Program-made: the position numbers and the translations under genes
In this document: piece after piece, positions 321-52,339 of the stretch
How positions within the stretch are numbered: position 1 is the first letter of the stretch
Layout: the number at the start of each line of letters is the position of its first letter
Notes under the pieces: model-generated
The model's input: the letters and a program-made list of their open reading frames with translations, nothing else
Database searches by the model: none
What the model was told of the DNA's origin: nothing
Assembly: GCF_006345805.1 (NCBI RefSeq)
Contig: NC_043007.1
Span: 48,422,001-48,486,000, forward strand
Source: Octopus sinensis
Lineage: Eukaryota
Reading direction: 5' to 3'
DNA: 64,000 nt

Positions 321-442
321 ATGTATAAATATATGTATATATAATAATGAAGGGTGAAATTAATTAATTTGGAATATTATCAATTACACCAAGTAGTCTT
401 CGGCATGTAAAAGCCTCATTTGAGGAAAATTTAAGTAATACT

Positions 443-592
443 AAGCAATAAGGGTTCAGCAACGAATTGCCTTACCACATACCGAATTTAGAAATAGCAG
501 TCAAAGGGTTATAGCTATAGCTATAACCCTTTGACTGCTATTTCTAAATTCGGTATGTGGTAAGGCAATTCGTTGCTGAACCCTTATTGCTT
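443..592. repeat. Perfect 150-bp palindrome (75-bp arms, no spacer), probably an inverted PLE terminal repeat
   Basis: 443-517 is the exact reverse complement of 518-592 (checked by eye). It sits directly upstream of the minus-strand PLE RT fragment. Confidence 0.9.
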
Positions 593-626
593 TGTATATA
601 TATATATGTATATATATATATATAAT

Positions 627-1882: not shown

Positions 1883-2108
1883 GGAGTAAACACATAAATG
1901 TTAAACAAGGTGGAAAAAAGAGTACTCAAATACCAGTGGTAGAGTAATATGCTTTATTTAAAGCAGCAGAAAATTCAACAAAACCTGTTACTCTGAGTTT
2001 CCCGTTGCCATTCATCGGACAGTTTTGCTAGCAAAAACTGTCCGATGAACGGCAACAGGAAACTCAGAGTAACAGGTTTTGTTGAATTTTCTGCTGCTTT
2101 AAATAAAG
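1883..2108. mobile_element. PLE-type terminal fold-back element (palindrome 1952-2108) carrying two hammerhead-like motifs
   Basis: Arms are reverse-complementary around gct|agc (2029/2030). The left extension 1883-1955 recurs inverted at 56825-56899. Flanked by (TA)n. Confidence 0.75.
2038..2075 (+). ncRNA. Minimal type I hammerhead ribozyme-like motif (U4C core); mirror copy on the minus strand at 1985-2022
   Basis: CTGT-CCGATGA-A[CG GCAA C(A/G)]G-GAA-ACTC A GAGT-A-ACAG: stem I CTGT/ACAG, GNRA-capped stem II, stem III ACTC/GAGT, GUA cleavage triplet. Confidence 0.55.
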
Positions 2109-2359
2109 TGTATATATATTATATATATAGATCAAAACAGTTTGATTCAAACTCCTTGGTAACCTGAGTTTTAAGTATGACGCTAGTCTTCGGCCATGGG
2201 AAGTTCAATTCAAGTTCTTATGGCTGAAGACTAGTACCAAGGAGTTTCAATCAAACTGATTTGATTCATAAATGTAACTCCTAAATGTGTTCAGTGCCTT
2301 TCTTTCACTTGTCTACCCACTCGCATGCGTGTGTGTGTATAGGTACATATATATATATA

Positions 2360-2800: not shown

Positions 2801-3468
2801 GAGTAAATGATGGTTTTCATCAGAAGGCAGAAGTATCTTTTATCAGGGTCAACTACTTTTCAGTGGTTGGGTGTAAATAAGATGTTACCACTAATTTTTA
2901 TGCAAAGGATACAATAAGGAAATGAGACATCATTTAATGTTAACTCATTTTTCTTGTTGTGAGGGAAAGCAATGAGCTGCAGTGTCTCAGTCAAATATAT
3001 GCAGTACACACATGAAGAGTTTATAGAAATTACTGGAGTTAACACAACTCAAGCAAAACATTTTGAGAATAACAAGTATACTTTGTTGAACGTGTGGTCA
3101 GAGAAAAATAGCAGTAGTCAGAACATTTCAGTGAAGCTCCTGCATACTGTCCTGGTGTAGGTAAACTGAAAGAGAGATCCGTGCTTTTTAGTGTTCAAGC
3201 GGTGAGAGAGAAAGAAAGCTCTCAACCACTGGAATATGCAAGGGTCAGTTGCGATGCTACCTAGTGGCGTTTATCTGCAATGGGACGTATTTCAGCTATC
3301 CTTGCTAGTCTACTACACATATATATATATATATATTTATTTTGTTTTGTTTTTTTGTCGCTTGCCTATGACCGTTATTTGAAAGGACCAATGAAACAAT
3401 CCATTTTTAAAGGTGCATCGTTTAGCTAGTTTTGATCAAATTGTTATTTCGGTTCTATTTTAGCAAAA

Positions 3469-3506
3469 CTGTCCGACGAACAGGAATGTGAAACTCGGAG
3501 TAACAG
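3469..3506 (+). ncRNA. Minimal type I hammerhead ribozyme-like motif (U4C core) in a PLE-type terminus (about 3462-3540)
   Basis: CTGT-CCGACGA-ACA GGAA TGT-GAA-ACTC G GAGT-A-ACAG; all three stems pair. Confidence 0.6.
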
Positions 3507-3543
3507 CTTTTGTTATATTTCTGCTGCTTTTAAATAAAGTGTG

Positions 3544-10187: not shown

Positions 10188-12102
10188 ATCATCATCACCA
10201 TTTAACATCTGTTGTCCATGCTGGCATGAGTTGGACGGTTTGACCAGGGCTGGCAAGCTGGAAGGCTGCACAAGACTCTAGTCTAACTTGGCATGGTTTC
10301 TATACCTGGATGCCCTTCCTAACGCCAACTACTCCACTGGCATGAGTGCCATTTGCATGACACCGGTATCTGCCATGACTGCAATTTTACTTGGATTGAT
10401 GGGTTTTCTTCTCAAGCAAAACATAATGCCAAAGGTCTCGGTCATTGCCCAACACTCAAAACGAGCTTTTCATGTACCACCAGCATAAGCCACTTTGCCT
10501 CTGTGTGACCCAACACTCAAAAGGTGCTTTTTACGTCCCACTGGCATGGGTGCCAGTTACATGACACCAGCATCAGCCACAACTACGATTTCACTTGGCT
10601 TGATGGATCTTCTCAAGAACAGCATATTGCCAAAGATCTCAGTCATTAGTCATTGCCTCTGTGAGGCCCAAAATTCAAAGATCACGCTTCACCACCTTGT
10701 CCTTCTAGGGTCTACCTCTATCACAGGTTTCCTCCACAGTTAGAGATTGGCACTTCTTTACACAGATGTCTTCATCCATCCGCATAACATGACCATACCA
10801 GTGCAGTCGTCTCTCTTGCACATCACATCTGATACCTCTTACACCCAACTTTTCTATCAAGATGCTTACACTCTGTTGAACATATACACTGACATTGCAC
10901 TCCAGCAAAGCATACTGGCTACATTTCTTTCAAGCCAACACATGTCCTCAGCAGTCACAGCCCATGTTTCACTGCCATTTAGCATGGCTGTTCACATACA
11001 GGCATCATACAATCTGCCTTTCACTCTAAGAGAGGCCCTTTGTTGCCAGCAGTGGTAGGAGCTCTCTGAACTTTGCCCAGCCTAATCTTATTCCAACAGC
11101 TACACTCTCAGAGCATCTATCTTCACTACTAACTTAGTCACCTAGATAATGGAAGCTATCTACTACCTCTAGCTTACCTCACTGGCAGTTGATGGAGTCT
11201 ATTTTCTGTACATTTTCAGTGTTTATTGTACCTGTGCGTCTTCCACACTCAAAAGCAATTTTCCCTGTTAACTTTCCTCTGATATTGTTGCACCTCATAT
11301 GTGCCCATAGCTTACACTAGGTATATCTTATGGAGTTTCTACCTATGCCTTTCCTACAGATCGAGCAGGGCCATCTACTTGAAGGGATTTGTGGTTTGTC
11401 TGCCTTCCTACTTACTAAGACTTTGGTTTTTTCTAGGTTAACTCTAAGGCCCTTCGATTCTAGACCTTGCTTCCATATCTGAAACTTCTTCTCTAGTTCT
11501 GTTAGTGATTCAACTATAGGAACACAGTCATCAGCATAGAGGAGCTTCAAGGGGTAGCCTGTCTTTAATTTCTCTGTTATTGCCTGGAGGACTATGATGA
11601 ACAAGAGGTGGTTGAAGACTGATCCTTGGTGAACACCTACTTGTACTCTGAATTTTTTGCTGTACTCATTGCCAACCTTCACCCTAGTGGTAGCGTCTCT
11701 GTACATGGCTTGTACAGCTCTCACCAACCATTTGTCTATCCCTAATTTCTGCATTGACCACCAGATGATGGACTGGGTGGGGGGCAGTCAAAGGCTTTCT
11801 CCAAGTCAACAAAAGCTAAGTACGGAGGTTTATCTTTGGCTAGGTACTTCTTCTACAGCTGCTTTACCAAAAATATAGCATCAGTGGTGCTTCTCCCTAA
11901 CACAAAATCAAACTGCATCTCATCTAGACTAACTCTCTTCCTAATTAGTTCGGCTATGACCCACTCCATAACTTTCATCAACTGATCTAACAATTTCATA
12001 CCTCCGTAATTATTTCTATCTAAAGCATCATTTTTACCTTTGTAGCTGTTGACTATGATGTGGCAACACCAGTCACTGGGTATGACTCCTTCGTGAACCA
12101 CC
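10188..12102 (-). mobile_element. RTE-clade LINE, 5'-truncated and decayed (RT + 3' UTR + (GAT)n tail)
   Basis: ORF fragments KNDALDRNNYGGMKLL...LDEMQFDF..GRSTTDAIF, GVHQGSV..LLF...LLYADD and RRLHWYGHVMRMDED. The tail is at the left end. Confidence 0.9.
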
Positions 12103-13974: not shown

Positions 13975-15045
13975 AATCATCATCATCATCATCATCATCA
14001 TCGTTTAACGTCTGCTTTCCATGCTAGCATGGGTTGGACAATTTGACTGAAGTCTGGTGAACCATATGGCTGCACCAGACTCCAATCTGATCTGGCAGAG
14101 TTTCTACAGTTGGATGCCCTTCCTAATGCCAACCACTCCGAAAGTGTAGTGGGTGCTTTTTACGTGCCACTGACACGAGGGCCAGTCAGGCGGTACTGGC
14201 AACAGCCACGCTCAAATGGTGCTTTTTACATGCTACCTGCACAGGAGCCAGTCCAGTGGCATCATCATCATCATTGTTCGACTGTGGTCGAGACAATGGA
14301 ATTTACCATGCTACGCCAGACTTCACGGTCCATCATGGCATTACGGAGGTCCTGTTGCTGGATGCCTGTATCCCTGGAGATTACATCAGGGTAGGAGAGT
14401 GTGCGCCCTCTGGTATTGCGAGTAGATGGCTTCCAGAGGAGAAGAGTAGAAATTACCTCTTTTTCAGCTCTACAACATGTCCAGCAAACTGGACTCTCTT
14501 ACCTTTCACAAGAGATGACACAGGTGGTAGTTTCCCATATATTTGCATTTTGGTTGGATGGCGCTTCCACGAGAGATTTTGAGCTCTCATAAGGAGGCGA
14601 GTGTAGGTTCCATCCAACCGCCTCTCAAGCTTCTTTGATAATGTCCAGGTTTCTGAGCCATATAGTAGAATTAGTTCGACTGTGGCTTTGAAGATTTCAA
14701 GTTTGAAGTCTCTACTTAGATTTGATGACCAGATCTTATGCATGTCATTACAGGCTGACCAGGCCATACCCTTTCTAGTTAGAAAGTCTTTTCCAGATGA
14801 TGATATGTATGACCCAAGATATTTGTAATCAGAAACCATATTTAAGGGCGCAACCTCGCTTGAATGTTTTTTCACGTGCCACCAGCACAAGTGCTAGTAA
14901 GGCGATACAGGTAACGATCACGCTTGGATGGTGTTTTTAACGTGCCATCGGCACGGATGCCAGCTTGTTGCTCTGGCAACGATCTCACTTGTGTGGTACT
15001 CTTAGCGCTCCATGAGTGAGATCGTTGCCAGAGCAACAAGCTGAC
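13975..15045 (-). mobile_element. RTE 3' UTR fragment interrupted by a second LINE (14262-14848)
   Basis: The (CAT)n tail and ggatgcccttcctaatgccaaccactc body stop at about 14260 and resume at about 14850 (cctcgcttgaatg). Confidence 0.7.
14262..14848 (-). mobile_element. LINE (RTE/RTEX-like) RT C-terminal fragment; ORF ends in a (TGA)n tail
   Basis: DYKYLGSYI...LLYGSETWTL...RVQFAGH, then (frameshift) RGRTLSYPDVISRDTG...NAMMDREVWRSMVNSIVSTTVEQ* running straight into gatgatgat. Confidence 0.85.
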
Positions 15046-22696: not shown

Positions 22697-23664
22697 TCGC
22701 GCGCGCGCGCATACACACGACTGTTTGCCTATCTATGAGAAGTGAAAGAGATAGTGACAGAGCAAGAAGAGGGTAAGAAAATAAGATAGAAGAGACAGGA
22801 AATAATGCAAAAGAAAGAAGTGTTAAAAGCGACTAAAACACAAGTATTACCATCACTATCGACAACATCATTATAACCACTAACACCATCATAACCACTA
22901 TCATCGTCATAGGTTGGACAAGGAGTACTGATATGATAAAGTCACATACTGGGAAGAAGTTGGAATGCTAAATATATTCAGAAAAAACGTAAAACTATGT
23001 TATGTGCTGTAAATGGATGTTTTAGAGTTGTGGAAACTAAAATATGTAACTTAAAACCACAAAGAATCGTTTTAAGTAGGTAAGAGCCTTATTTTAACTA
23101 AATCTCTTCCGTTTCTTTTTTGTATACGTATTTCTGTGTATGTATATCGTATACTTATATGCACACACCACACTTTTAGTGTTTTTGCTATAGGGGTGTG
23201 ACTTTCATATATATATATGTATATATTTGTATGTATGTATAGGTGATGTTGTGATGTTGATGCATGGTTTACCTGCGGCGTCAGACTTGTAAATAAGAAC
23301 TGAAACGTTCGAAAAGAAAATCAATCACTTTCTACTTTTGCCTTTTTTTAGAAATATCATAGTTTTTCATATTTTTGCTGTTGTGACTGGTATATAATGA
23401 CTTGTAGATTCGTCACTTTTTGAAAAATATGTCTTTGTTTTGGGGCCATGCTTAGTTTGGCTCCTTTTTATTTCTTTTCATAAAGTATTTAGATATATTA
23501 ATATAACCTCATAGGAAGATACTTTGCACATATTGTTGCTGTTGCCTCTAAAACCCTTTTAATGTATATACTTTCTAATCGAACCCTTTCAGGGCCACTT
23601 GCACACACCACTTATATTTTTGTTTCAACTTATTTACTCCACCAGCGTTGACAGACATTTCCAG

Positions 23665-28574: not shown

Positions 28575-30592
28575 GGTAAGTAGCTTGCTTACGAACCACA
28601 TGGTTCCAGGTTCAGTCCCACTGCTTGGCACCTTGGCCAAGTGTCTTCTATTATAGCCTCAGGCCAACCAAAGCCTTGTGTGTGGATTTGGTTGGTGGCA
28701 ACTGAAAGAAGCCTGTTGTATATACAGGGATGCTGTCAGTAAGGTGAGGGTTGGCAATGAGTACAGTGAAGAATTCCGGGTAGAGGTAGGGGTCCACCAA
28801 GGTTCAGTCCTCAGCCCCCTCCTATTTATCACAGTCCTCCAGGCAATAATAGAGGAATTCAAGACAGGATGCCCCTGGGAGCTCCTCTATGTTGATGACC
28901 TTGCTCTAATTGCTGAGTCACTATCAGAACTAGAGGAGAAGTTTCAGGTGTGGAAACAAGGATTAGAATCAAAGGGCCTTAAAGTCAACCTAGCTAAACC
29001 AAAGTTCTAATAAGTAGGAAGGCAGGCAAACCACAAATCTCTTCAGGTAGATGGCCCTGCTCGATCTTTAGAAAAGGCATAGGTAGAAACTCTAAAAGAT
29101 GTACCCAGTGTAAGCTATGGACACATAAGAGGTGCAGCAATATCAAAGGAAGGCTAAATAGGAAGATAGTTTTTGTATGTGGCAGATGCTCAGGAGCAAT
29201 AAACACTGAAAATGTGCAGAAAACAACTTCCGCCATATTCCAAGGAGGAAAACTAGCAGTAGTTGTTAGCTTCCGTTACCTAGGTGACCAGTCAGTAGCA
29301 GGGGAGGGTACACTGAAAGTGTAGCTGCTAGAATAAGAATAGCCTGGGCAAAGTTCAGAGAGCTCTTACCTCTGTTGGTGACAAAGGGCCTCTTGCTCAG
29401 AGTAAAAGGTAGACTGTATGACGCATGTGTATAAACAGCCATGCTATATGGCAGTGAAACATGGGCCGTGACTGCTGAGAACATGTATAAGCTCACAAGG
29501 AATGAAACCAGTATGATCTGATGGATGTGTAATGTCAGTGTGCATACTCGACAGAGTGTAAGTACCTTGAGAGAAAAGTTGGACCTAAGAAGCATTAGAT
29601 GTGGTGTGCAAGAGAGATGACTGCGCTGGTATGGTCATGTGATGAGAATGGATGAGGGTAACTGTGTGAAAAAGTGCCCCACCCTAGCGGTTGAGGGAAC
29701 CTGTGGAAGAGGTAGACTCAGGAAAACCTGGGATGAAGTGGTGAAGCATGACCTTCGAACATTGGGCCTTACCAAAGCAATGATTAGTGACTGAGACCTT
29801 TGGAAATAATGCTGTGCTTGAGAAGACACAGCAAGCCAAGTGAGACCATAACCTTGTGGCCTATGCCAGGGGTGTAACCAGCCCACTTATGCGTACCTTT
29901 CCTTCATTGGACACTAAACTCTGCTTGCGAAGCCCTATTGAGGCAAGTGAAATCGAAATCAAATTTGATGACTGGCATCCGTGCTAGTGGAGCGCTAAGA
30001 GCACCATCCGACTGTGATCGTTGCCAGAGCAGCTAACTGGCTTCCATGCTAGGGGCACATAAAAAGGACCAATCGAGTGTGGTCATTACCAGCGTCGCCT
30101 TACTGGCACGTGAAAAATCATTCGAGCGAGGTCATTGCCAGTGCCACTGGACTGGCTCCTGTGCAGGTGGCATGTAAAAAACACCATTTGAGCGTGGCTG
30201 TTGCCAGTACCACCTGAGTGGCACGTAAAAGCACTCACTACACTCTCAGAGTGGTTGGTGTTAGAAAGGGCATTCAGCTGTAGAAATTCTTCCAGATCAG
30301 ATTGGAGCCTGGTGCAGCCATCTGGTTCGCCAATCCTCAGTCAAACCGTCCAACCCATGCTAGCATAGAAAGCAGACATTAAACGATGATGATGATATGT
30401 ATGTGTGTGTATATGTTTGTGTCGGTGTTTGTCACCCCAACATCGCTTGACAACCGATGCTGATGTGTTTACATCCTCATAACTTAGTGGTTTATCAAAA
30501 GACACCGATAGAATAAGTCCTGGGGTCAATTTGCTCGACTAAAGGCAGTGCTCCAGCATGGTCACAGTCAAATGACTGAAACAAGTAAAAGA

Positions 30593-35590: not shown

Positions 35591-36447
35591 CTAGCTGACG
35601 TACCCAGTAATTGCTGGGAAAGCAGGGCTTATCCCTTAGTTCCATTCTCATAATTGTTTCACTAATCCAGTAACAACATTACAAAGTATGTTGCCCTTAA
35701 AACGGTTTTTGTACATTTACAGAGAATACCGAACTGTCTTACACAGGATCTTATTTTTATGAATACCCAAATTGTCAAATCAGCTGTGTAATAACATAAA
35801 ATTAATTGCCCAATAGTAAGAATTCAAATAAAGTAGCCCCGAAAAGGGCTTTAATACATTCCCAGAGTATATAGAACTTAGGAGGAAATACTAATAAGGT
35901 ATGTATAGTAAAATCGTGAAGCATCTTACATAATAACAGGCTAATCAGATATGAGATAATAACAATTCAAAGTAAATAGCTCTGAAAAAAGCTTTTGTGC
36001 ATTTGCAGAGGATATTACCCTCAGCGACACTAGTGTTGGTATATTCGTGAATAAGTCACTAACCGAAATAAGTGGGTCTATTGTTTAGGAAAATACTATT
36101 TACTTGTTTAAGCATTGTACTGGATACAGTGTGAAAATAACTGAAATAGTTCAAATACTAAGAAATAAGCATTCTCAGTTTGATTTATACCAAATAATTT
36201 ACGAAGATGAATGGGTTATTTCCCTTGGATGTTTAAAAATAATATATTAGTTATATGTAGTAGATATAAGAATCCCTTGAAGGGATTCTTATATCGATTT
36301 TTTTCAAGTATGTCACTAGTTTTCCAGACGTGGGTTCTACTCACGTGTCAAGTTTCATCAAAATCAATAAAATGATGTAGGAGGAGTTAGATAACAACTC
36401 CACAAACAAACACACCCACAGACAGAATTTTCCACATATGTTGTAGA
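35591..36447 (-). mobile_element. Non-autonomous Helitron
   Basis: A|TC start on the minus strand (36447). 3' end CCCAG-caatta-CTGGG hairpin, 8 nt, then CTAG|T. Homologous to 46851-47918. Confidence 0.75.
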
Positions 36448-36719
36448 TATTGCTTAGGCATTGTGAGACTAATAACCTGGTGTAGAACTCAATATACATA
36501 TGCTTCAGAATGAAGTGTTAGACGAGTATAGAATGGGTATTAAGAAAATGAGATGACAAAAGGAAAAAAACGATTATGTCATGAACTTCATTTGCTTATA
36601 GTTGTTTCTATGAGATGCAGTGGACTCGTAGCTGAGTACCAGAATAGCACTTTATAGCTTCAATGAAGTGCAATTTACGTGGGGAAAAAATTACATTTGA
36701 GCATATAAGTATGTATATA

Positions 36720-37390: not shown

Positions 37391-37511
37391 ATGGAGATTA
37401 ACTTACCAATCTTTAAGAAACCAAAGATAGAAGACAATGGGGAATCAATTTCCAGCAGTGAAACAACTGTGCCGGACCAGACCAAGAAATATGTGACCCA
37501 AGTATTCCTAA
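37391..37511 (+). CDS. CIPC: CIPC-like gene, first coding exon (MEINLPIFKKPKIEDNGESISSSETTVPDQTKKYVTQVFL + 1 nt); the exon itself starts at 37351
   Basis: Polypyrimidine acceptor ...ccttcattttacag|37351. In-frame TGA (37382-37384) lies upstream of ATG 37391, and the other two frames also close. Donor A|GTAAGC at 37511/37512 is phase 1, matching the next exon. Confidence 0.7.
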
Positions 37512-43574: not shown

Positions 43575-44520
43575 TCTTTATCACAAGTTTTGTTGGAACT
43601 CCTGGAGTCTTGCATGTATATTGGGCTTACTACCTGCAGCCTATGGTACCATGCTATTCGTTCTTTTCAGCTATCTAATACTTTACAAATTATTCTGGCC
43701 ATGCCAAGGAGACAAACCTTTTGTAACAGTTCTACTGGGCACTCTATTCCAATGTCCTTTATATTGCTCTTAATGCCTTCTGATACTGTTCCCAAAGACC
43801 TAACAATAATTGGTACTATCTTCACCTTCTTCATTTTCCATAGCCAGGCTATTTCATACTTAAGAGGGTTGTATCTATTTATCTTTTTACCTTCTTTCTT
43901 GACTATTTGTGGATCAAAGGGGCATGCAACATCAACTGTATAGCATATGTGGTGCACCTTGTTCACCACCACTATGTCCAGTCTGTTATGCTTTAGCACC
44001 TGATCTGTTTGGATTGGAAAATCCCAGATGATTTTGCTAGTCTCCGACTCTGTCACTCTCTGCGGTTTGTGCTCATACCACGTCTTGCCTCTCTCTAGCC
44101 CCCACTTTTTTCACAATTTCCAATACAGCACTTTTGCTACCTAGTCATGTCGCCACAGCTTGTAGTGGTTTTGAGCAAGTCTAAGGACATTCATTCATGC
44201 TATGGGCAATGGTTTCATACACTCTATTGCAGATGCAGCTCAGCAGAGACACTTGTTCATTCCTCAGGTTGACCCCCCCAGTTTGTGGCCAGAGTTTAGT
44301 CTTGCACTGCAAGTATAGGGCTCTCAGTCTCCTTTTTAAGTGTTCCTTTCATCTGCCAATCCCACCTATTTTTTCAAGCAACTTCTGCTGTGGCTACATG
44401 GAATTGATTGTATAGTCCCTTCTTGCGTAATTCTTCTTCATGTCCTTTTTGTACTCCTTCCTTTGTTTTCCCTTTTTACTCTGCTCTCAATACTCCCTCA
44501 TTCCTAACTATCACTAGCAA
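43575..44520 (-). mobile_element. Second R4/Dong-like LINE 3' fragment
   Basis: KIIWDFPIQTDQVLKHNRLDIVVV...VDVACPFD...KINRYNPLKYEI...VPIIVRSLGTV...LQKVCLLGMARIICKVLDS*, followed by triplet-repeat tails. Confidence 0.85.
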
Positions 44521-45245: not shown

Positions 45246-45748
45246 AGTAGTAGTAGTAGTAGTAGTAGTAGTTGTAGTTGTAGTAGTAGTAGTAGTTGTT
45301 GTTTTTGTTGTTGTTTCTAAAAACATCAACCATATTTTGTTTTTGCCTTGTAGTTCCTCCAGTAAACCAGTATAAACCACACAAAACTCGGCGAACACGA
45401 TTAAAATACAGCCTGGGACCTGACCGTTCTTCATCCGGTTCTTGTGGCAGTGGCATCACACAGTCTGCATTTGTTGGTAAGTTGAGGAGCACCTTTACAT
45501 TTTACCATTTGATATATATATATATATAATCTGGTTCTTATGGCAGTGGCATCACACAGTCTGCATATATGTTTATATGCATATATCTGTATATACATAT
45601 ATGTGTGTGGGTGGGTGTATATATATATATATGTGTGTGTGTGTGTGCATGTATATATGTATATATATATTATATATATATATATATATATAATATATAT
45701 GTATGTATGTATGTATGTGTGTATGTATATATATATTATATATATATG

Positions 45749-46097: not shown

Positions 46098-46156
46098 GAA
46101 AAACCGATAATTGTGAGAAGGAATCAAAAAAGTCACAGAATGATGGAATAATATCT
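46098..46156 (+). CDS. CIPC: CIPC-like gene, second coding exon (59 nt; [R]KTDNCEKESKKSQNDGIIS)
   Basis: Acceptor ttttgcttcttacag|46098 and donor TCT|GTAAGT at 46156/46157. Phase 1 in and phase 0 out keeps one open frame between the flanking exons. Confidence 0.75.
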
Positions 46157-46850
46157 GTAAGTAATAAATTAATATGCATACTTACAACAGCCTTGGATTA
46201 AAATTACAATGTATTGTAATAACATGTATTGTGTGTTTAACAAACATAGAATAACACTAACTGTAATGTTTTGTCTCATACAAACTTCTCAAAGAGATTT
46301 TTATGATGAAAAAAAGTATTCTTAGCACCTTCAATACTTTTTTTCATCCTGACATTGTGTAAAACAGTGATTCCCACTGATGGGGCATACAGTGAGGTTT
46401 GGAATCTGAAATTTCTTTTTCTTTTACTTTTTAGTGGAACATAGTATTGTGAAAATCTTTTTTTTTTTTTTTGTTAATCAATAATGTACATTTTTTGTAC
46501 ATACTCACTGGCACTCCATTGGTTATGACGACAAGGGTTCCAGTTGATCTGATCAACAGAATGGCCTGCTCATGAAATTAACATACAAGTGCTTGAGCAA
46601 TCCACAGACATGTGTACCCTTAATGTAGTTCTCAAAGAGATTCTGTGTGACACAGAATGTGACAAAGTTGGCCCTCTGAAATAACCCCAGTACTTATTTC
46701 CTTTTTAAATCTCCTACATATTCTATCAGTCTCTTTTGTGGAAGCACTAAGTTACAGGGATGTAAACACACCAACACTGTTGTCAAGCATTAATGTAGGA
46801 CAAACACAAACACACACACACATAGATATATACATATATATATGCATATA

Positions 46851-47918
46851 CTAGCTGGTGTACCTGGTAATTCCCGGGGGTAAAGATGTTCTATTGAAAC
46901 ACCTTATTACTCTGATATGAGAAAGCAATTTCATTATTTCAGTCACGTAAAAGTACAAAAAACTGTCAGCTGGAGGAAGGAAAAATTGTTGGAGGTTGGC
47001 GAGAGAGGTTTTCGGAGGCTGGCAAGAAAGACTGTCGGTGGTTGGTGAGAGGCAAAGACATTATTCTACTTTGCGAAGGCATCTAGGAAATGTATAACTG
47101 CTGTCATTCACAGAAAAACTATTGTTTTACCGTGAAAAATGTGCTGTTGAAGTGTTAAGTGAAATTTGGCAATTGAAGATCGAATCCATGCTATGCATGC
47201 ATGAAACCACTACAAATACATTGTGGAATAAAAAATTTATCTACTGTCATGGAAAAAGTGTAACTGTAAAAATGCAGAATTATCAGAGTAATGGGCATTC
47301 AAAAACGTATATATGTATAGAAATGTATGAATGAAGACTTTAAGGTTTAAGATTCAAATTAAGGAAGTGCAATAATAATGTTTAGCAGTTCAAAACTGTG
47401 AGTAAGGAAACTCAGAATTAGGTTGGCTTCACTAAAATCTGCAGGTGATATGGGTTATTTCCCTTGGGTTGTTTAAATAAAATATTAGTAAAATGTAGTA
47501 GATAGAAGGATCCATTGGAAGGGTGATATCGATTTTTTACAACAATCTAAGTATGTCACGAGGTTTCCAGACATGAGTTCTACTCACGTGGTAAATAAAG
47601 TATAAAAGTGATATTGTTTGCAAAAATTAGAAATAGGACTCACACAAAAAAATCAATATTCAAAGTAATCAAACATAAACAATGAAGTGGGTTATTTCCC
47701 TTGAGTGTTTAAAAAGTTAGTTATATGAAGTAGATATAAAGGTCCCTTCCAGGGGCTGTATTATCGATTTTTTTCAACAATCTAAGTATGTCACAAGGTT
47801 TCCAGACATGAGTTCTACTCACGTGTCAAGTTTCATCGAAATCAATAAAATGATGTAGGAGGAGTTAGCTAACAACGCTACAAACACACACACACAGATT
47901 TTCCACATTTGTAGTAGA
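46851..47918 (-). mobile_element. Non-autonomous Helitron with a captured fragment and an internal duplication
   Basis: A|TC...CTAG|T termini as in 35591-36447. 47053-47212 matches 4280-4427. A ~135-bp block is duplicated (about 47450-47590 and 47685-47825). Confidence 0.75.
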
Positions 47919-48080
47919 TATGTGATGAGCTTCTGTTAGTTTCTGTTTACCAGATCCACTCATAAGGATTTGGTCAGCCTGAGTCTAGAGCAGAAGACAC
48001 TTTCCCAAGGTGTCATGCAGTGGGAGTGAACCTGGAACCATGTGGTTGGGAAGTAAACTTCTAACCTCGCAGCCACTTGA
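47919..48080 (-). mobile_element. SINE family A head
   Basis: gaagacactttcccaaggtgtcatgcagtgggagtgaacctggaaccatgtggttgggaag. Confidence 0.75.
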
Positions 48081-48299
48081 GTGTCAGTATGGTCTTGCAG
48101 TTTTTATTCTGAATTTTTATGTTATGTGTTCAAATCCACTTGAGGTCAACAATGACCATTCCTTCCAGGGTTGATAAAATGAAGTAACTATCTATTTCTA
48201 ATGTTGATGGTATTGACAAGCACCCTTCTCAGATTTTCTGGCCTTGTGCCTAATTGAGAAACAGTTGAAATCTCTTATGTAGTGTATAGAAAAGATATG

Positions 48300-48660
48300 A
48301 GTACTTAGTGGTTAAAGTGTTGGACATTTCATTGTAAGATTGTGGTTTCAGTTCCAGGACTGGGTGATGTGTTGTGTTCTTGAGCTAAACACTTCATTTC
48401 ATGTTGCTTCAGCTCATTCAGCTAGCAAAAATGAGTAATTCTGCAAGAGACTAGCATCCCATCCAGGGGGGAATATATGTGCCATGGAGACTGGGAAACC
48501 AGCCTTATGACTCAGGTAGGCTCTTTATCCTTTTGTAAAGGTATATGGCCTAGTGGTTTAAGCATTGCACTCACAATTGTCAGATCATGGTTCGATTTCC
48601 AGACCAGGCAGTGTGTTGTGTTCTTATGCTAAATGCTTCATTTCATGTTGCTCTGGTGCT
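48300..48660 (+). mobile_element. Two tandem tRNA-derived SINE heads (similar copy at about 37550-37650)
   Basis: tagtggttaaagtgttgg...ggtttcagttcc and atggcctagtggttaagcattgc...ggttcgatttcc, each followed by gtgttgtgttctt...cttcatttcatgttgc. Confidence 0.7.
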
Positions 48661-49582
48661 GTGTAGGGACTAGTATTTATTTTATTTTTATTTTATTTTA
48701 TCTAGTTTCAGCTCATGAGCTGTATGCCAAAGAATACACCCAATGTTTCCTCTGTCTATTATAAAAAGTGACTAAAAGAGGTTGAGATAGGATTTGCACG
48801 TTGACCTCACAAAACCTGCATCAAACAGATCCATGGGGTGGAGGGTTGTTGCCTGAGTAGAGCAGAAGCATCATCCACCAGGAGTAGTGAGGAGTCACCA
48901 ACAAATGGTGGATGATGTGGTCAGATGTGCAGAATAGATCTGAACTAATTATATAAAATGGTTTTACTCTGAAACTAAAGCCATTTTTTTTACTTCTATT
49001 GATAATGTCCTATAGAAAAACATAAATGTCATACAATATCATTTGTGTTCCAACATATTTCAGGTTTCAGCCTAAAATCAATTAAAAACTTTTGTTCACT
49101 TCAGGACATTCTTCAGCTTTTAATTTGGTTAGTGTCTTAGCTATAGTCCCCCTCTCTATGATCGTTATGACAGTGATTCTCTGTCTTTGGCCTTATTCTT
49201 CCTATTGTTAATGTAGCTCTGCTAAAGACAGTCCCAAGCCTGACTGCAAAAGGAGGAGGGTAGTTTCCATGCCAGGACAGCATGAACCAGGAAACTGGGG
49301 AAACCAAGCAAGAAATCGTCAGGATACTAACAGACTAACATCATCACCAAATTCTATCATCCAGTTGCACCCACAGCAGTGTATAGGTTGAAAGGACAGC
49401 TTCCCTCTCCAATTGCAAGCTGGGATTTAAGAAGATTGTTAATATACCAATATAATGTATCTGACATATGTTTTTCTCTCCTGTAATTCTGTATTCTAAC
49501 AATGCTGATTTGTTTTATTTGTTCTGTTACATGACCACTTTTAATCACCAATTTTAATGTTTCACTGTTTCTAATTCAACAG

Positions 49583-50095
49583 GAAAATGAAGTTTCGCTC
49601 TCCAGTTCAATGTTTAGTTCTGAAGAGAAGTGCTATGACAACTTATCTGACCAGGGATATTTACCGATATCTGAAGGAGCATGCTCACTTTTATCAGAGA
49701 AGGAATCTGGGAATGAATCTGGATATAGTTCTCATAGCGCTGGCTATATAAAAGATTTGCCTATGGACAAAAGAATAGAAAATTTGTCCAATGCAAATGA
49801 CCCTCTGGTTGACATAAACAGTGTTGAGAGCAAACAGAGTAATTTATCAGAGTCAAGTAGTGGCCCTTCAGACAAGAGAATGCGATTTTTGCGAACTGCT
49901 AGTGCCCTGCAACGGTCAGGGCTGATGGATATAACAATGAAGACTGCTGATATCTTGAAACAGAATCGGATAGTGAACAAAGAAATAGAAAGATTACACC
50001 AGGACACACTCAAATTTTTACATAGTGTCATCAATAACCCTGAGAATAAAACCTTCCAAGACACAATTACAAGGAACTGCGACAAACATTCTTGA
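49583..50095 (+). CDS. CIPC: CIPC-like gene, last coding exon with C-terminal CiPC coiled-coil domain
   Basis: Acceptor ttctaattcaacag|GAA at 49583, open to TGA 50095. The C-terminus RMRFLRTASALQRSGLMDITMKTADILKQNRIVNKEIERLHQDTLKF resembles the CIPC domain as I recall it (RFxxTxxxLxxSGLxxITxKTxxLxxQN). SEKESGNESGYSS resembles the CIPC SEKDSGFS-type serine motif. Family assignment is from memory, with no HMM run. Confidence 0.8.
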   Translation, partial: ENEVSLSSSMFSSEEKCYDNLSDQGYLPISEGACSLLSEKESGNESGYSSHSAGYIKDLPMDKRIENLSNANDPLVDINSVESKQSNLSESSSGPSDKRMRFLRTASALQRSGLMDITMKTADILKQNRIVNKEIERLHQDTLKFLHSVINNPENKTFQDTITRNCDKHS

Positions 50096-51436
50096 GTAAA
50101 GCATGTGTATTTCTGAATCTTTTCTATCAGACACTCATGTTAATTTTGTTTCCACATTTACTACAGACACAAAAATTAATTCACTGTCATCATCATCACC
50201 ATCATCATTATCACCATCATCATTATCATCTCTGTTACTAGTAATTAAATACTTCTCTACTATTCAGATTTTGTCAATTCATAAAAATTTTCATTTAATC
50301 ATATATTTATATCAGTTTTCTTTCTCTCTTTTTTGTTTTTGTTTGATGAAGAAGGTTTGTCTGAAATATTGATTTTTCTTCTTCTTTTCTTCATTCCATC
50401 AATCAGTATTTATTTTATTTTAGTTTTTACTGCTGTATATCATATATCATCTTATTTATTTCCTCTTTCCACCCTTTGTCTCATTCACCTCAATACTCTC
50501 AAGTGTTAGATGTTAGAGAGAATATTACTAGTCAAACTTTCTTTATTATAAATCATTGTTACTGATGAAAAGAATTCAATGAGAATGGGTTTGAAGTTCT
50601 AATATTTTAAGATTGCCATCTAGTGTTTGCCTCACTGACAAATTCAAGATGGTTTACCTGTTATATAGTTCACCTGTGCAAAATTCTACTATATCACAAT
50701 ACCTCAATACAACCAATTTGTCGTTCACAGTAGAATTATTAAAAAGACTTTCAGCTTTATTCTCACTTATTAGAATGGAAATAATAAACAAATTATTTTC
50801 ATTTTCAGAAAAGAAAAAAAAATGAAAAAGAAGACACAGGGGAAACAAATCCAATAGATGTGACATCTTAAAGTCATTACTGCTTTAGGAGACATCTTAG
50901 AAGTGTGTTGGTCACACAGTTTATATAAAACCACACATCTGTATTTATTATGGTCAAGTTCCTTCTCTTCGATATTGAATTAATTAAATTTACTTCCTTC
51001 TCATCAAATGTGAATCAATCTTTTCTTTAGTTCCATTCAGTTTAACCATAAAGTAAGACTAGTCTCGCTCTGTGATTGCTGCAGTTTAATATTCTCTGTA
51101 CAAACCCAATAACAAAATTAGATTCATGAATTGAGGTTTTTTTTTAATGAGTTTCTCATTTGAATTTGTTTCTTTCCATTTTAATTCTAAAGTTGTTTCT
51201 TCAGATAGAAATAATATTGGTAAACTGTTGAAGAGTAAACTGCATTTATTAACCTATGAAGTGGCCATATTATTCACCTATCATGCTTATGATAGATGCA
51301 TTAAACTGTGTTACTCTCCTAAAATTTATAAGTTGTCATGGCAAACAAAGTAGCATCAAAATGTCAGCTTATTTTAGTGTCCAATAATATTTATTGACAT
51401 GACAAAATATCTCACCATGTAAAGTATTTTTATCTA

Positions 51437-51606
51437 TTGGGAAAGTGTCTTCTGCTCTAGACTCAGGCTGACCAAATCCTTATGAGTGGATCTGGTAAAC
51501 AGAAACTAACAGAAGCTCATCACATATCTACTACAAATGTGGAAAATCTGTGTGTGTGTGTTTGTAGCGTTGTTAGCTAACTCCTCCTACATCATTTTAT
51601 TGATTT
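51437..51606 (-). repeat. 170-bp exact inverted copy of 47839-48008
   Basis: Base-by-base reverse-complement identity, including the (CA)6 tract and the Helitron/SINE junction. Confidence 0.95.
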
Positions 51607-52339
51607 TCTTCTGCAAAAGTTGGATAGTACCACCAAACATTCTGTTTCTTGATATTCCAGATTCCCATGGTGGATAGTCTTGCCAGCAAATATTTACAAA
51701 CTGGCCACCCTAACTGTCAAATATTGTACATATCATTGAAAGAATACAAAATGGTACTTGGTTATATAAACCAACATTTTGAAAAGTCTATATTCCTAAA
51801 ATATGGCACATAATGTTGCCGTCAATTGATCTAAACATTATTTTTTATTTAACGGTTTCAATTTCTAGTGATTACTCAACTAAATATGTGACATATTTGT
51901 TGGTCATTCACCCGAAACTATGCACCAATAGCAATTGAAAACTCTCACCATCTTATTTATATTAGCAACAGCATGGAGTAGTCATAGACAGGAGGGGAAT
52001 ATTTTTGCTTCAGGAGTAAAATGTTAGATGTGTTTTATGTTGTACTTGTTGAAAAGCTGCTGCCTGTCAATTAATATGAAGCATTATTGGATTTTAGAAT
52101 TTAAAAGCTCTTGTGGTTGTTATTATTGTTGTTGTTGTGTAAAGGCAAATGTAGTGCAGTAGTGAATTTAACTGTAAATTTCTTAATCCAGTTTCACTTC
52201 TCAGTCAAAACTATTTCACTTAAGTCACTAATGCCCATTGGCAAGGTATACACATCACTACTTCTTATTACTTCTCTTTAGCCATGACATCAAAGCTTCA
52301 TCCTTACCAAGTCATCATCGTCATCATCATCATCATCAG

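What the first reader, a model, noticed from the sequence alone, without database searches (positions are those of the whole stretch)
47839..51606. 170-bp perfect inverted duplication brackets the last coding exon of the CIPC-like gene
47839-48008 (last intron) and 51437-51606 (about 1.3 kb past the stop) are exact reverse complements. The copied piece spans a junction: 80 bp of Helitron end plus 90 bp of an unrelated SINE head. It is therefore a recent local templated copy, not two independent TE insertions. All other repeats here are visibly diverged. If the transcript reaches 51.6 kb, the pre-mRNA could fold a 170-bp perfect duplex looping out the CiPC-domain exon, a strong potential ADAR substrate in a lineage known for heavy A-to-I editing. 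The IR could also promote a 3.4-kb inversion. The IR is seen directly; the consequences are inference.
Basis: partly seen in the sequence, partly recalled or inferred. Interest (0 to 1): 0.7.

Follow-up and report, generated by a model that had tools for sequence, protein, structure and literature searches.

The report
Species-specific inverted copy around clock-gene exon
In the Octopus sinensis assembly, a 167-bp piece of the last intron of a CLOCK-interacting (CiPC) gene was copied backwards into the gene's 3' region 3.4 kb away; this is a known kind of DNA copying error that could make the pre-mRNA fold on itself, but no effect has been shown.

Summary
Window 47839-48008 and 51437-51606 are exact reverse complements (170 nt). 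This is the longest inverted repeat within 10 kb in the window and the only perfect one.

The window is Octopus sinensis chromosome CM016869.1. The gene is LOC115217409, a CiPC-domain protein.

- **Arm A** lies in the last intron (46157-49582).
- **Arm B** starts 1,342 nt after the stop codon.

Orthologous loci settle the origin. O. vulgaris and O. bimaculoides both keep arm A. Both have a clean empty site where arm B sits.

The net insert is 167 bp. The junctions share 3 nt of microhomology. There is no target duplication of 5 bp or more, no poly(A) and no lost target bases. Both arms carry a T that is C in both relatives.

Arm B is therefore a young, local, inverted templated insertion of the MMBIR/FoSTeS or break-patch type. 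It is not a transposon insertion.

The SINE part is the antisense 3' half, not the head. "Helitron" could not be verified.

A published 3'UTR alignment for this gene runs past arm B, so both arms may share one pre-mRNA. Editing, inversion and any function are untested. An assembly artefact is unlikely but not excluded.

This is a new member of a known kind, of modest interest.

The parts
47839..48008 (+). Arm A, the donor: about 81 nt of the end of an unclassified ~245-bp repeat plus about 89 nt of the 3' half and tail of a minus-strand SINE. It lies in the last intron.
   Evidence: Orthologous copies: O. vulgaris L004 35470-35639 (169/170) and O. bimaculoides L002 20192-20368 (about 89%).
51437..51606 (-). 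Arm B, the inverted copy. The net insertion is 167 bp (51437-51603, 51438-51604 or 51439-51605, ambiguous because of the T runs). It is absent from O. vulgaris and O. bimaculoides.
   Evidence: Empty site: TATCTA-TTTT-CTTCTG. Filled site: TATCTA-TT-[165 nt]-TTTT-CTTCTG.
51595..51607 (+). Junction on the return side. The last 12 nt of the insert (TTTTATTGATTT) match the pre-insertion target (TTTTATCTATTT) at 10 of 12 positions. The T run is shared microhomology.
   Evidence: P about 0.015 given the 3 terminal matches.
47937..47937 (+). Derived T in O. sinensis (C in O. vulgaris and O. bimaculoides). The mirror position 51508 in arm B carries the same state.
47682..47921 (+). It ends ...TTTTCCACATTTGTAGTAGATAT. 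Its 145-bp left part is also present in tandem at 47446-47590. A second copy lies at 36207-36450 (82%).
47922..48085 (-). SINE copy on the minus strand with a B-box-like GGTTCCAGGTTCA. Other copies of the family end in a (TA/TG)n tail. Its 3' end abuts the unclassified repeat.
   Evidence: Alignment A1 of 9 copies. ARAGORN and Rfam find nothing here.
46157..49582 (+). Last intron of LOC115217409 (GT...CAG).
49583..50095 (+). Last coding exon with the CiPC domain and the TGA stop at 50093-50095.
50096..51735 (+). Minimum extent of the 3'UTR as used in a published O. sinensis/O. bimaculoides 3'UTR alignment. A conserved Mir-190 8-mer ACATATCA lies at 51728-51735, 122 nt beyond arm B.
   Evidence: PMC9699675 data S3. 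Coordinates matched. Conservation 96.5% before and 96.6% after arm B, against 93.1% in the intron.

Best explanation
Arm B is a secondary copy made in the O. sinensis lineage, after its split from O. vulgaris about 2.5 Mya. A 167-bp stretch of the gene's own last intron was copied in inverted orientation into a site 3.4 kb downstream, in the gene's 3' region. That stretch happens to cross the junction of two old repeats. The copying was a template switch guided by a few bases of microhomology. Either a replication strand jumped to the nearby opposite-strand template and back (FoSTeS/MMBIR type), or a broken end primed on the nearby sequence and was then rejoined (synthesis-dependent break patch). 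Nothing was cut out of the donor, and nothing was lost or duplicated at the target. The result is a perfect 170-nt inverted repeat around the last coding exon. If the long 3'UTR isoform is made, both arms sit in one pre-mRNA until the last intron is removed, and they can pair into a 170-bp duplex. Such a duplex would be an ordinary, if unusually perfect, substrate for ADAR. No function is shown. The default reading is a neutral or slightly deleterious structural variant. Shown: the repeat, the polarity (insertion, O. sinensis-specific), the donor, and the junction anatomy. Inferred: the enzymatic route, co-transcription, and any RNA consequence.
For: Perfect 170-nt IR. The window is O. sinensis CM016869.1. 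O. vulgaris (0.51% substitution divergence over 46.9 kb) and O. bimaculoides are collinear across the site and lack exactly 167 bp. Arm A is present in both. The junctions share 3 nt of microhomology in total, with no TSD of 5 bp or more, no poly(A) and no target deletion. There is a 10/12 homeology on the return side. Both arms share the derived T at 47937/51508. Both ends of the copy are internal to repeats, and the repeat junction occurs nowhere else in about 170 kb of octopus sequence examined. This matches the published MMBIR templated-insertion signature: an insertion near its template, inverted relative to it, and flanked by microhomologies (PMC8421209). It also matches class 2 templated sequence insertions: no TSD, no poly(A), NHEJ-type junctions (PMC5110952). 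RNA side: the duplex is -321 kcal/mol. The MFE fold of the 4,051-nt segment pairs 169 of 170 arm positions, at -1176 against -914 kcal/mol without the insert. A published 3'UTR alignment extends past arm B. Most octopus A-to-I editing is in introns and 3'UTRs (PMC9699675).
Against: Only one O. sinensis assembly (PacBio plus Hi-C) carries the insert, and I could not reach independent reads or contigs, so an assembly artefact is not excluded. Three nucleotides of microhomology are not far from chance, and the 10/12 homeology is only marginally significant. A DNA template cannot be told from an RNA template. The event is larger and more distant (167 bp, 3.4 kb) than typical catalogued MMBIR insertions (10 bp or more, within 100 bp). 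The median octopus 3'UTR is only 350-380 nt. Five conserved PAS-like hexamers, including AATAAA at 50783, lie upstream of arm B, so many transcripts may end before it. The RNA data behind the published annotation came from O. vulgaris, which lacks arm B.
Confidence: 0.72

Rival explanations
1. Assembly or polishing artefact: the 167 bp were placed at 51.4 kb by error in the O. sinensis PacBio assembly and do not exist in the animal.
For: The insert is 100% identical to a sequence 3.4 kb away and is seen in a single assembly. Two other assemblies of close relatives lack it. The same assembly also differs from O. vulgaris by clean 245-bp and 332-bp gaps nearby. That assembly has lower contiguity than the O. 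vulgaris one (PMC10700109 table).
Against: Both flanks continue collinearly with no loss or gain of target bases. The junctions have a biological microhomology signature. Known long-read artefacts (missed-adapter palindromes, collapsed repeats) do not produce a clean, short, inverted insertion of a unique repeat junction 3.4 kb from its source. The window has no N gaps.
Confidence: 0.12
2. RNA-templated patch: a reverse transcriptase (for example from a LINE) copied a piece of the gene's own unspliced pre-mRNA, or of a read-through transcript of the arm-A SINE. The cDNA then sealed a break or nick in the 3' region (class 2 templated sequence insertion, or an atypical 5'-truncated retrocopy).
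For: The donor is transcribed (intron of the same gene), and nascent RNA is tethered close to the target. Class 2 TSIs have exactly these junction features and are reported to derive from RNA (PMC5110952). On the + strand arm B reads in SINE sense, is 5'-truncated, and ends just after a T4 run (CATCATTTTATTGATTT) that could act as a Pol III stop. LINE reverse-transcriptase fragments are present in the window.
Against: There is no poly(A) or microsatellite tail and no TSD. The copy extends 8 nt past the T4 run. A free retrocopy landing within 3.4 kb of its source in a 2.7-Gb genome is very unlikely by chance. Nothing in the sequence requires RNA.
Confidence: 0.12
3. Ordinary transposition: arm B is an independent insertion of a mobile composite element that carries the same repeat junction. 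Alternatively, the IR is ancestral and arm B was lost in the other species.
For: Both halves are repeat-derived. SINEs make up about 11.6% of the O. vulgaris genome (PMC13282606).
Against: Both ends are internal to their elements. There are no terminal features and no TSD. The copy is 100% identical to the neighbouring copy, including a lineage-specific substitution. No further copy of the junction occurs in about 170 kb. Ancestral presence would need two identical, perfectly precise deletions in O. vulgaris and O. bimaculoides.
Confidence: 0.03

Closest known systems
MMBIR/FoSTeS templated insertions (MMB-TI; Osia et al. 2021, PMC8421209)
   Same: The insertion lies near its template, is inverted relative to it, and is flanked by short microhomologies. 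The donor is left intact.
   Different: Here the insert is 167 bp and lies 3.4 kb away. Catalogued MMB-TIs are 10 bp or more, up to read length, with templates within 100 bp. This is a germline, species-level difference, not a somatic or cancer event.
Class 2 templated sequence insertion polymorphisms (Onozawa/Aplan, PMC5110952)
   Same: A short patch copied from elsewhere, with no TSD, no poly(A) and NHEJ-type junctions with microhomology. It is a presence/absence variant.
   Different: Human class 2 TSIPs come from distant loci and are argued to be RNA-derived. Here the donor is 3.4 kb away in the same gene, and the nature of the template is unknown.
Short-range template-switch mutations that create hairpins (Loytynoja & Goldman 2017, PMC5453318; PMC8794818)
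   Same: One mutational event creates a perfect inverted repeat that can fold as an RNA stem.
   Different: Those events span tens of bases with short loops. This one has 170-nt arms and a 3.4-kb loop containing an exon.
Inverted repeat pairs (e.g. inverted Alu pairs) in introns and 3'UTRs as ADAR substrates
   Same: Two repeat-derived arms in opposite orientation within one transcription unit. In octopus most editing is likewise in introns and 3'UTRs (PMC9699675).
   Different: Those pairs arise from independent TE insertions and are diverged, as are the 73-83% pairs in this window. Here the arms are a perfect copy made in one step. One arm is intronic, so the duplex can exist only before the last intron is spliced. 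No editing data were available.

Membership tests
Local templated insertion by template switching (MMBIR/FoSTeS-type) | Extra copy at the recipient site with the donor left intact | tested here: met
   Arm A is present in O. sinensis, O. vulgaris and O. bimaculoides. Arm B is present only in O. sinensis.
Local templated insertion by template switching (MMBIR/FoSTeS-type) | Template nearby and, typically, in inverted orientation | tested here: met
   The arms are 3,428 nt apart and reverse-complementary. The distance is larger than in catalogued cases.
Local templated insertion by template switching (MMBIR/FoSTeS-type) | Microhomology at both junctions, with no TSD and no poly(A) | tested here: met
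   170 nt are identical against a net insert of 167 nt, which leaves 3 nt shared. The target TTTT is kept and nothing is lost. There is a 10/12 homeology on one side. Three nucleotides is weak statistically.
Local templated insertion by template switching (MMBIR/FoSTeS-type) | DNA (not RNA) template, arising during replication or break-induced replication | not testable with these tools
   The sequence alone cannot separate a DNA template from an RNA template.
SINE/LINE-type retrotransposition (TPRT) | Element with its own 3' end and tail, flanked by a TSD, with dispersed copies | tested here: not met
   The copy starts and ends inside two different repeats. There is no tail and no TSD of 5 bp or more.
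Helitron (for the left-hand repeat, 47682-47921) | 5'-TC and 3'-CTRR ends, a subterminal GC-rich hairpin 10-12 nt from the 3' end, and insertion between A and T | tested here: inconclusive
   In + orientation the end is ...GTAGTAGATAT, with no CTRR and no nearby hairpin. In - orientation the terminus would read A|TCTACTAC, which suits a 5' end, but the other end (…GGGAAATAACCCA) has no CTRR. Only two independent copies were available.
SINE (for 47922-48085, minus strand) | Many dispersed copies with a shared 5' start, an internal Pol III box and a simple-repeat tail | tested here: met
   Nine copies align with a common start, GGTTCCAGGTTCA and (TA/TG)n tails. tRNA ancestry is not confirmed: ARAGORN and Rfam are negative.
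ADAR substrate formed by an intramolecular inverted repeat | Long, near-perfect duplex | tested here: met
   170 bp, -321 kcal/mol. The duplex forms in the MFE fold of the 4-kb segment.
ADAR substrate formed by an intramolecular inverted repeat | Both arms present in one RNA molecule | tested here: inconclusive
   A published 3'UTR alignment reaches window 51735, and conservation continues past arm B. However, proximal PAS hexamers exist, and the RNA data came from O. vulgaris.
ADAR substrate formed by an intramolecular inverted repeat | A-to-G clusters in RNA relative to DNA | not testable with these tools
   No O. sinensis RNA reads could be reached.

The most novel reading that the evidence does not exclude
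The insertion created, in one step and in one species only, an intron-to-3'UTR double-stranded RNA clamp around the terminal exon of a circadian-clock regulator. This clamp changes its expression in O. sinensis relative to O. vulgaris, through hyper-editing of the 3'UTR arm, retention of the last intron, nuclear retention or siRNA production. More broadly, local inverted templated insertions could be a recurrent source of new ADAR substrates in octopus genomes.
Probability: 0.07. Interest if true: 0.6.

Novelty: new member of a known kind. Interest (0 to 1): 0.3.

Why it matters
On its own this is a single, probably neutral structural variant of a well-described mutational type. Its value is as a clean natural experiment. 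Two octopus species that differ by 0.5% in sequence differ by the presence or absence of a perfect 170-bp intron/3'UTR duplex in one gene. That lets one ask directly what such a duplex does to editing, splicing of the last intron, 3'-end choice and mRNA level in a heavily editing lineage. It also shows that perfect inverted repeats in these repeat-rich genomes need not come from paired transposon insertions.

Tried and rejected
- **Independent O. sinensis sequence across the junctions.** I looked up exact ORFs spanning or adjoining arm B in the assemblies/Logan index and scanned JGI metagenome contigs with a flank 28-mer. Nothing was found.
- **A further homology search not run.** I ran no further search on spurious UTR ORFs. 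The first search showed no Logan contig carrying even the coding exon of the octopus gene.
- **Argonauta hians locus (L003).** Only the coding exon aligns, so it gives no information on the site.
- **Helitron classification.** Only two independent copies were available and no repeat library, so the result is inconclusive.
- **tRNA origin of the SINE.** ARAGORN and Rfam were negative.
- **Age from arm identity.** With 0.51% divergence between species, zero differences in 340 bp is uninformative beyond 'much younger than the O. bimaculoides split'.
- **Poly(A) signal scan.** Many conserved hexamers lie in AT-rich sequence, so the 3' end cannot be placed.
- **Other templated insertions.** Among all O. 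sinensis/O. vulgaris indels of 10 bp or more in 47 kb, the indels of 10 bp or more inside the aligned blocks showed no other inverted templated copy; several are microsatellite or tandem-repeat changes; the larger gaps between aligned blocks, such as the 245- and 332-bp ones, were not tested for templates.
- **Gene-level literature.** No paper names LOC115217409 in its main text. It appears only in a supplementary table.
Full report
**1. The observation**

Window 47839-48008 and 51437-51606 are 170 nt long and 100% reverse-complementary, with 3,428 nt between them. Identity ends abruptly on both sides. Of 116 inverted pairs within 10 kb in the window, this is the longest and the only perfect one. 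Pairs of interspersed repeats are 73-83% complementary. Two short-spacer palindromes elsewhere reach 99% and 95%.

**2. Where the window comes from**

The 170-aa translation of 49583-50092 hits Pfam CiPC (PF15800, E=7.6e-13). It is 100% identical to Octopus sinensis LOC115217409. The locus fetched for that protein equals window 27391-60095 of CM016869.1 in GCA_006345805.1.

The coding exons map to these positions:
- 37391-37510
- about 45353-45475
- 46098-46156
- 49583-50095

The last intron is therefore 46157-49582 (GT...CAG) and contains arm A. Arm B begins 1,342 nt after the TGA at 50093-50095.

**3. What the arms are made of**

Arm A crosses the boundary of two old repeats at about 47919-47929.

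*Left of the boundary.* This is the end of a repeat of about 245 bp (47682-47921). A second copy lies at 36207-36450 (82% identity). Its 145-bp left part is also repeated in tandem at 47446-47590. I could not confirm that it is a Helitron:
- In + orientation it ends ...GTAGTAGATAT, with no CTRR and no subterminal hairpin.
- In - orientation it would begin A|TCTACTAC, which suits a Helitron 5' end.
- The other end has no CTRR.

*Right of the boundary.* This is a SINE. An alignment of nine copies shows that it lies on the minus strand. The arm therefore holds the antisense 3' half and tail of the SINE, not its head. ARAGORN and Rfam find nothing in the region.

**4. Polarity of the event**

Orthologous loci were fetched for three species:
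- O. vulgaris (L004)
- O. bimaculoides (L002)
- Argonauta hians (L003)

O. vulgaris differs from the window by 0.51% substitutions over 46.9 kb. O. bimaculoides differs by about 5-7%. Both are collinear through the region, and both contain arm A: 169/170 and about 89% identity.

Both also lack arm B. Their sequence reads ...GTATTTTTATCTA-TTTT-CTTCTGCAAAAG.... O. sinensis reads TATCTA-TT-[165 nt]-TTTT-CTTCTG. From this:
- The net insertion is 167 bp.
- The 170-nt identity includes 3 nt of junction microhomology.
- There is no target-site duplication of 5 bp or more, no poly(A) and no loss of target bases.

At arm position 99 (window 47937, mirror position 51508) both O. sinensis arms carry T, while O. 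vulgaris and O. bimaculoides carry C. The copy therefore carries a change derived in the O. sinensis lineage.

The two species split about 2.5 Mya, and O. bimaculoides split about 34 Mya (PMC10700109). Arm B is thus a young, O. sinensis-specific insertion copied from arm A. The alternative of ancestral presence would need two identical, perfectly precise deletions.

**5. Mechanism**

The anatomy has these features:
- The donor is intact.
- The copy is inverted and close by.
- Both ends are internal to repeats.
- Each junction has a few bases of microhomology.
- Nothing is lost at the target.

This is the signature described for MMBIR-type templated insertions (PMC8421209). It also fits class 2 templated sequence insertions (PMC5110952). 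It is not the signature of SINE or Helitron transposition.

One further detail is suggestive. The last 12 nt of the insert (TTTTATTGATTT) match the pre-insertion target (TTTTATCTATTT) at 10 of 12 positions. This would help a nascent strand return to its original template. The chance probability is about 0.015 given the three terminal matches, so the evidence is suggestive only.

I favour a DNA template switch during replication or break repair, because the donor is only 3.4 kb away. An RNA-templated patch from the gene's own pre-mRNA cannot be excluded. Arm B reads in SINE sense on the + strand and ends just after a T4 run. This keeps a read-through retrocopy formally possible, but the proximity, the missing tail and the missing TSD argue against it.

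In the aligned blocks of the 47 kb shared with O. vulgaris, no other indel of 10 bp or more has an inverted copy nearby. Several are microsatellite or tandem-repeat changes.

**6. Real or artefact**

The insert rests on one assembly. I could not reach independent O. sinensis reads or contigs.

Several points make an artefact unlikely:
- The flanks are clean and collinear.
- The junction signature is a biological one.
- No known long-read artefact places a short inverted copy of a unique junction 3.4 kb from its source.

I put the chance of an artefact at about 0.1. It is not excluded.

**7. Consequences**

*Folding.* As RNA, the two arms pair at -321 kcal/mol. In the minimum-energy fold of the 4,051-nt segment 47700-51750, 169 of 170 arm positions pair with each other. 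Total energy is -1176 kcal/mol, against -914 with the 167 bp removed. No other complementarity of 30 nt or more links the last intron to the 3' region.

*Is arm B transcribed with arm A?* Evidence that it can be:
- Data file S3 of Zolotarov et al. 2022 (PMC9699675) lists a conserved Mir-190 8-mer (ACATATCA) for LOC115217409/LOC106875245. It lies in the 3'UTR alignment anchored at NC_043007.1:48472093-48472095, at alignment position 1692-1699.
- That anchor is the stop codon at window 50093.
- The only ACATATCA between 50093 and 56000 is at 51728-51735.
- It falls at column 1693 of my own O. sinensis/O. bimaculoides alignment.
- Their 3'UTR for this gene therefore runs at least 122 nt past arm B.
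- Identity to O. bimaculoides is 96.5% from the stop codon to arm B and 96.6% in the 500 nt after it. It is 93.1% in the intron and 94.1% further downstream.

Evidence that many transcripts may not include it:
- The paper's methods do not say exactly how UTR ends were set for the alignment.
- Its RNA came from O. vulgaris, which lacks arm B.
- The median octopus 3'UTR is only 350-380 nt.
- Five conserved PAS-like hexamers lie before arm B.

*Inference from established knowledge.* Removal of a last intron is coupled to recognition of the downstream poly(A) site. In the long isoform both arms should therefore coexist before splicing. A long perfect duplex is promiscuously edited by ADARs. Edits in arm B would persist in the mature 3'UTR.

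*What is not shown.* None of this was measured. Because the bracketed exon is terminal, it has no downstream splice donor, so circular RNA formation is not expected. Inversion of 48009-51436 by recombination between the arms is possible. The assembled haplotype is collinear with both relatives.

**8. Verdict**

The repeat labels need correcting. The functional ideas remain hypotheses, with one prerequisite indirectly supported.

This is a new example of a known mutational class, not a new kind of element. Its main interest is as a natural presence/absence test of a perfect intron-3'UTR duplex between two sister octopus species.

Noticed in passing
window 438-597: A 160-bp palindrome of unique sequence (80-nt arms, no spacer, 99%) lies directly next to a (TA/TG)n microsatellite. 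It looks like a fold-back copy of a retroelement 3' end.
   Followed up: partly
window 1947-2113 and 3461-3542: A 167-bp palindrome (80-nt arms, 7-nt spacer, 95-96%) lies next to a (TA)n run. One arm has a single, non-palindromic relative at 3461-3542 (84.5%), which is itself followed by a microsatellite. This suggests the palindrome arose by snap-back copying of a repeat's 3' end.
   Followed up: partly
window 42184 and 43076 (O. vulgaris L004 29275-29519 and 30413-30744): O. sinensis lacks 245 bp and 332 bp of non-repetitive sequence that O. vulgaris has, with 1-2 nt of microhomology at the edges. The surrounding segment is absent from O. bimaculoides, so the direction (deletion, insertion or assembly gap) could not be set.
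   Followed up: partly
window 22997-23080: The alternative first coding exon of the 290-aa O. vulgaris isoform (P0009) is present at 100% amino-acid identity in O. sinensis, about 14 kb upstream of the ATG exon of the 271-aa form. The gene therefore probably has two promoters or first exons.
   Followed up: no
window 47446-47590 and 47683-47825: The 145-bp left part of the unclassified repeat is duplicated in tandem (84.6% identity over the 143-nt unit; its best-conserved 64-nt core is 97%), start-to-start spacing about 235-237 bp. The duplication is shared with O. vulgaris and O. bimaculoides.
   Followed up: partly
window 51728-51735: An ACATATCA 8-mer, listed in a published table as a conserved Mir-190 target site, lies 122 nt downstream of the new insertion. 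It is identical in all three Octopus species.
   Followed up: yes
window 11317-11754, 14453-14890, 28678-29010, 43667-44056: Open reading frames with reverse-transcriptase-like sequence (LINE fragments) are scattered through the window, some inside the gene's introns.
   Followed up: no
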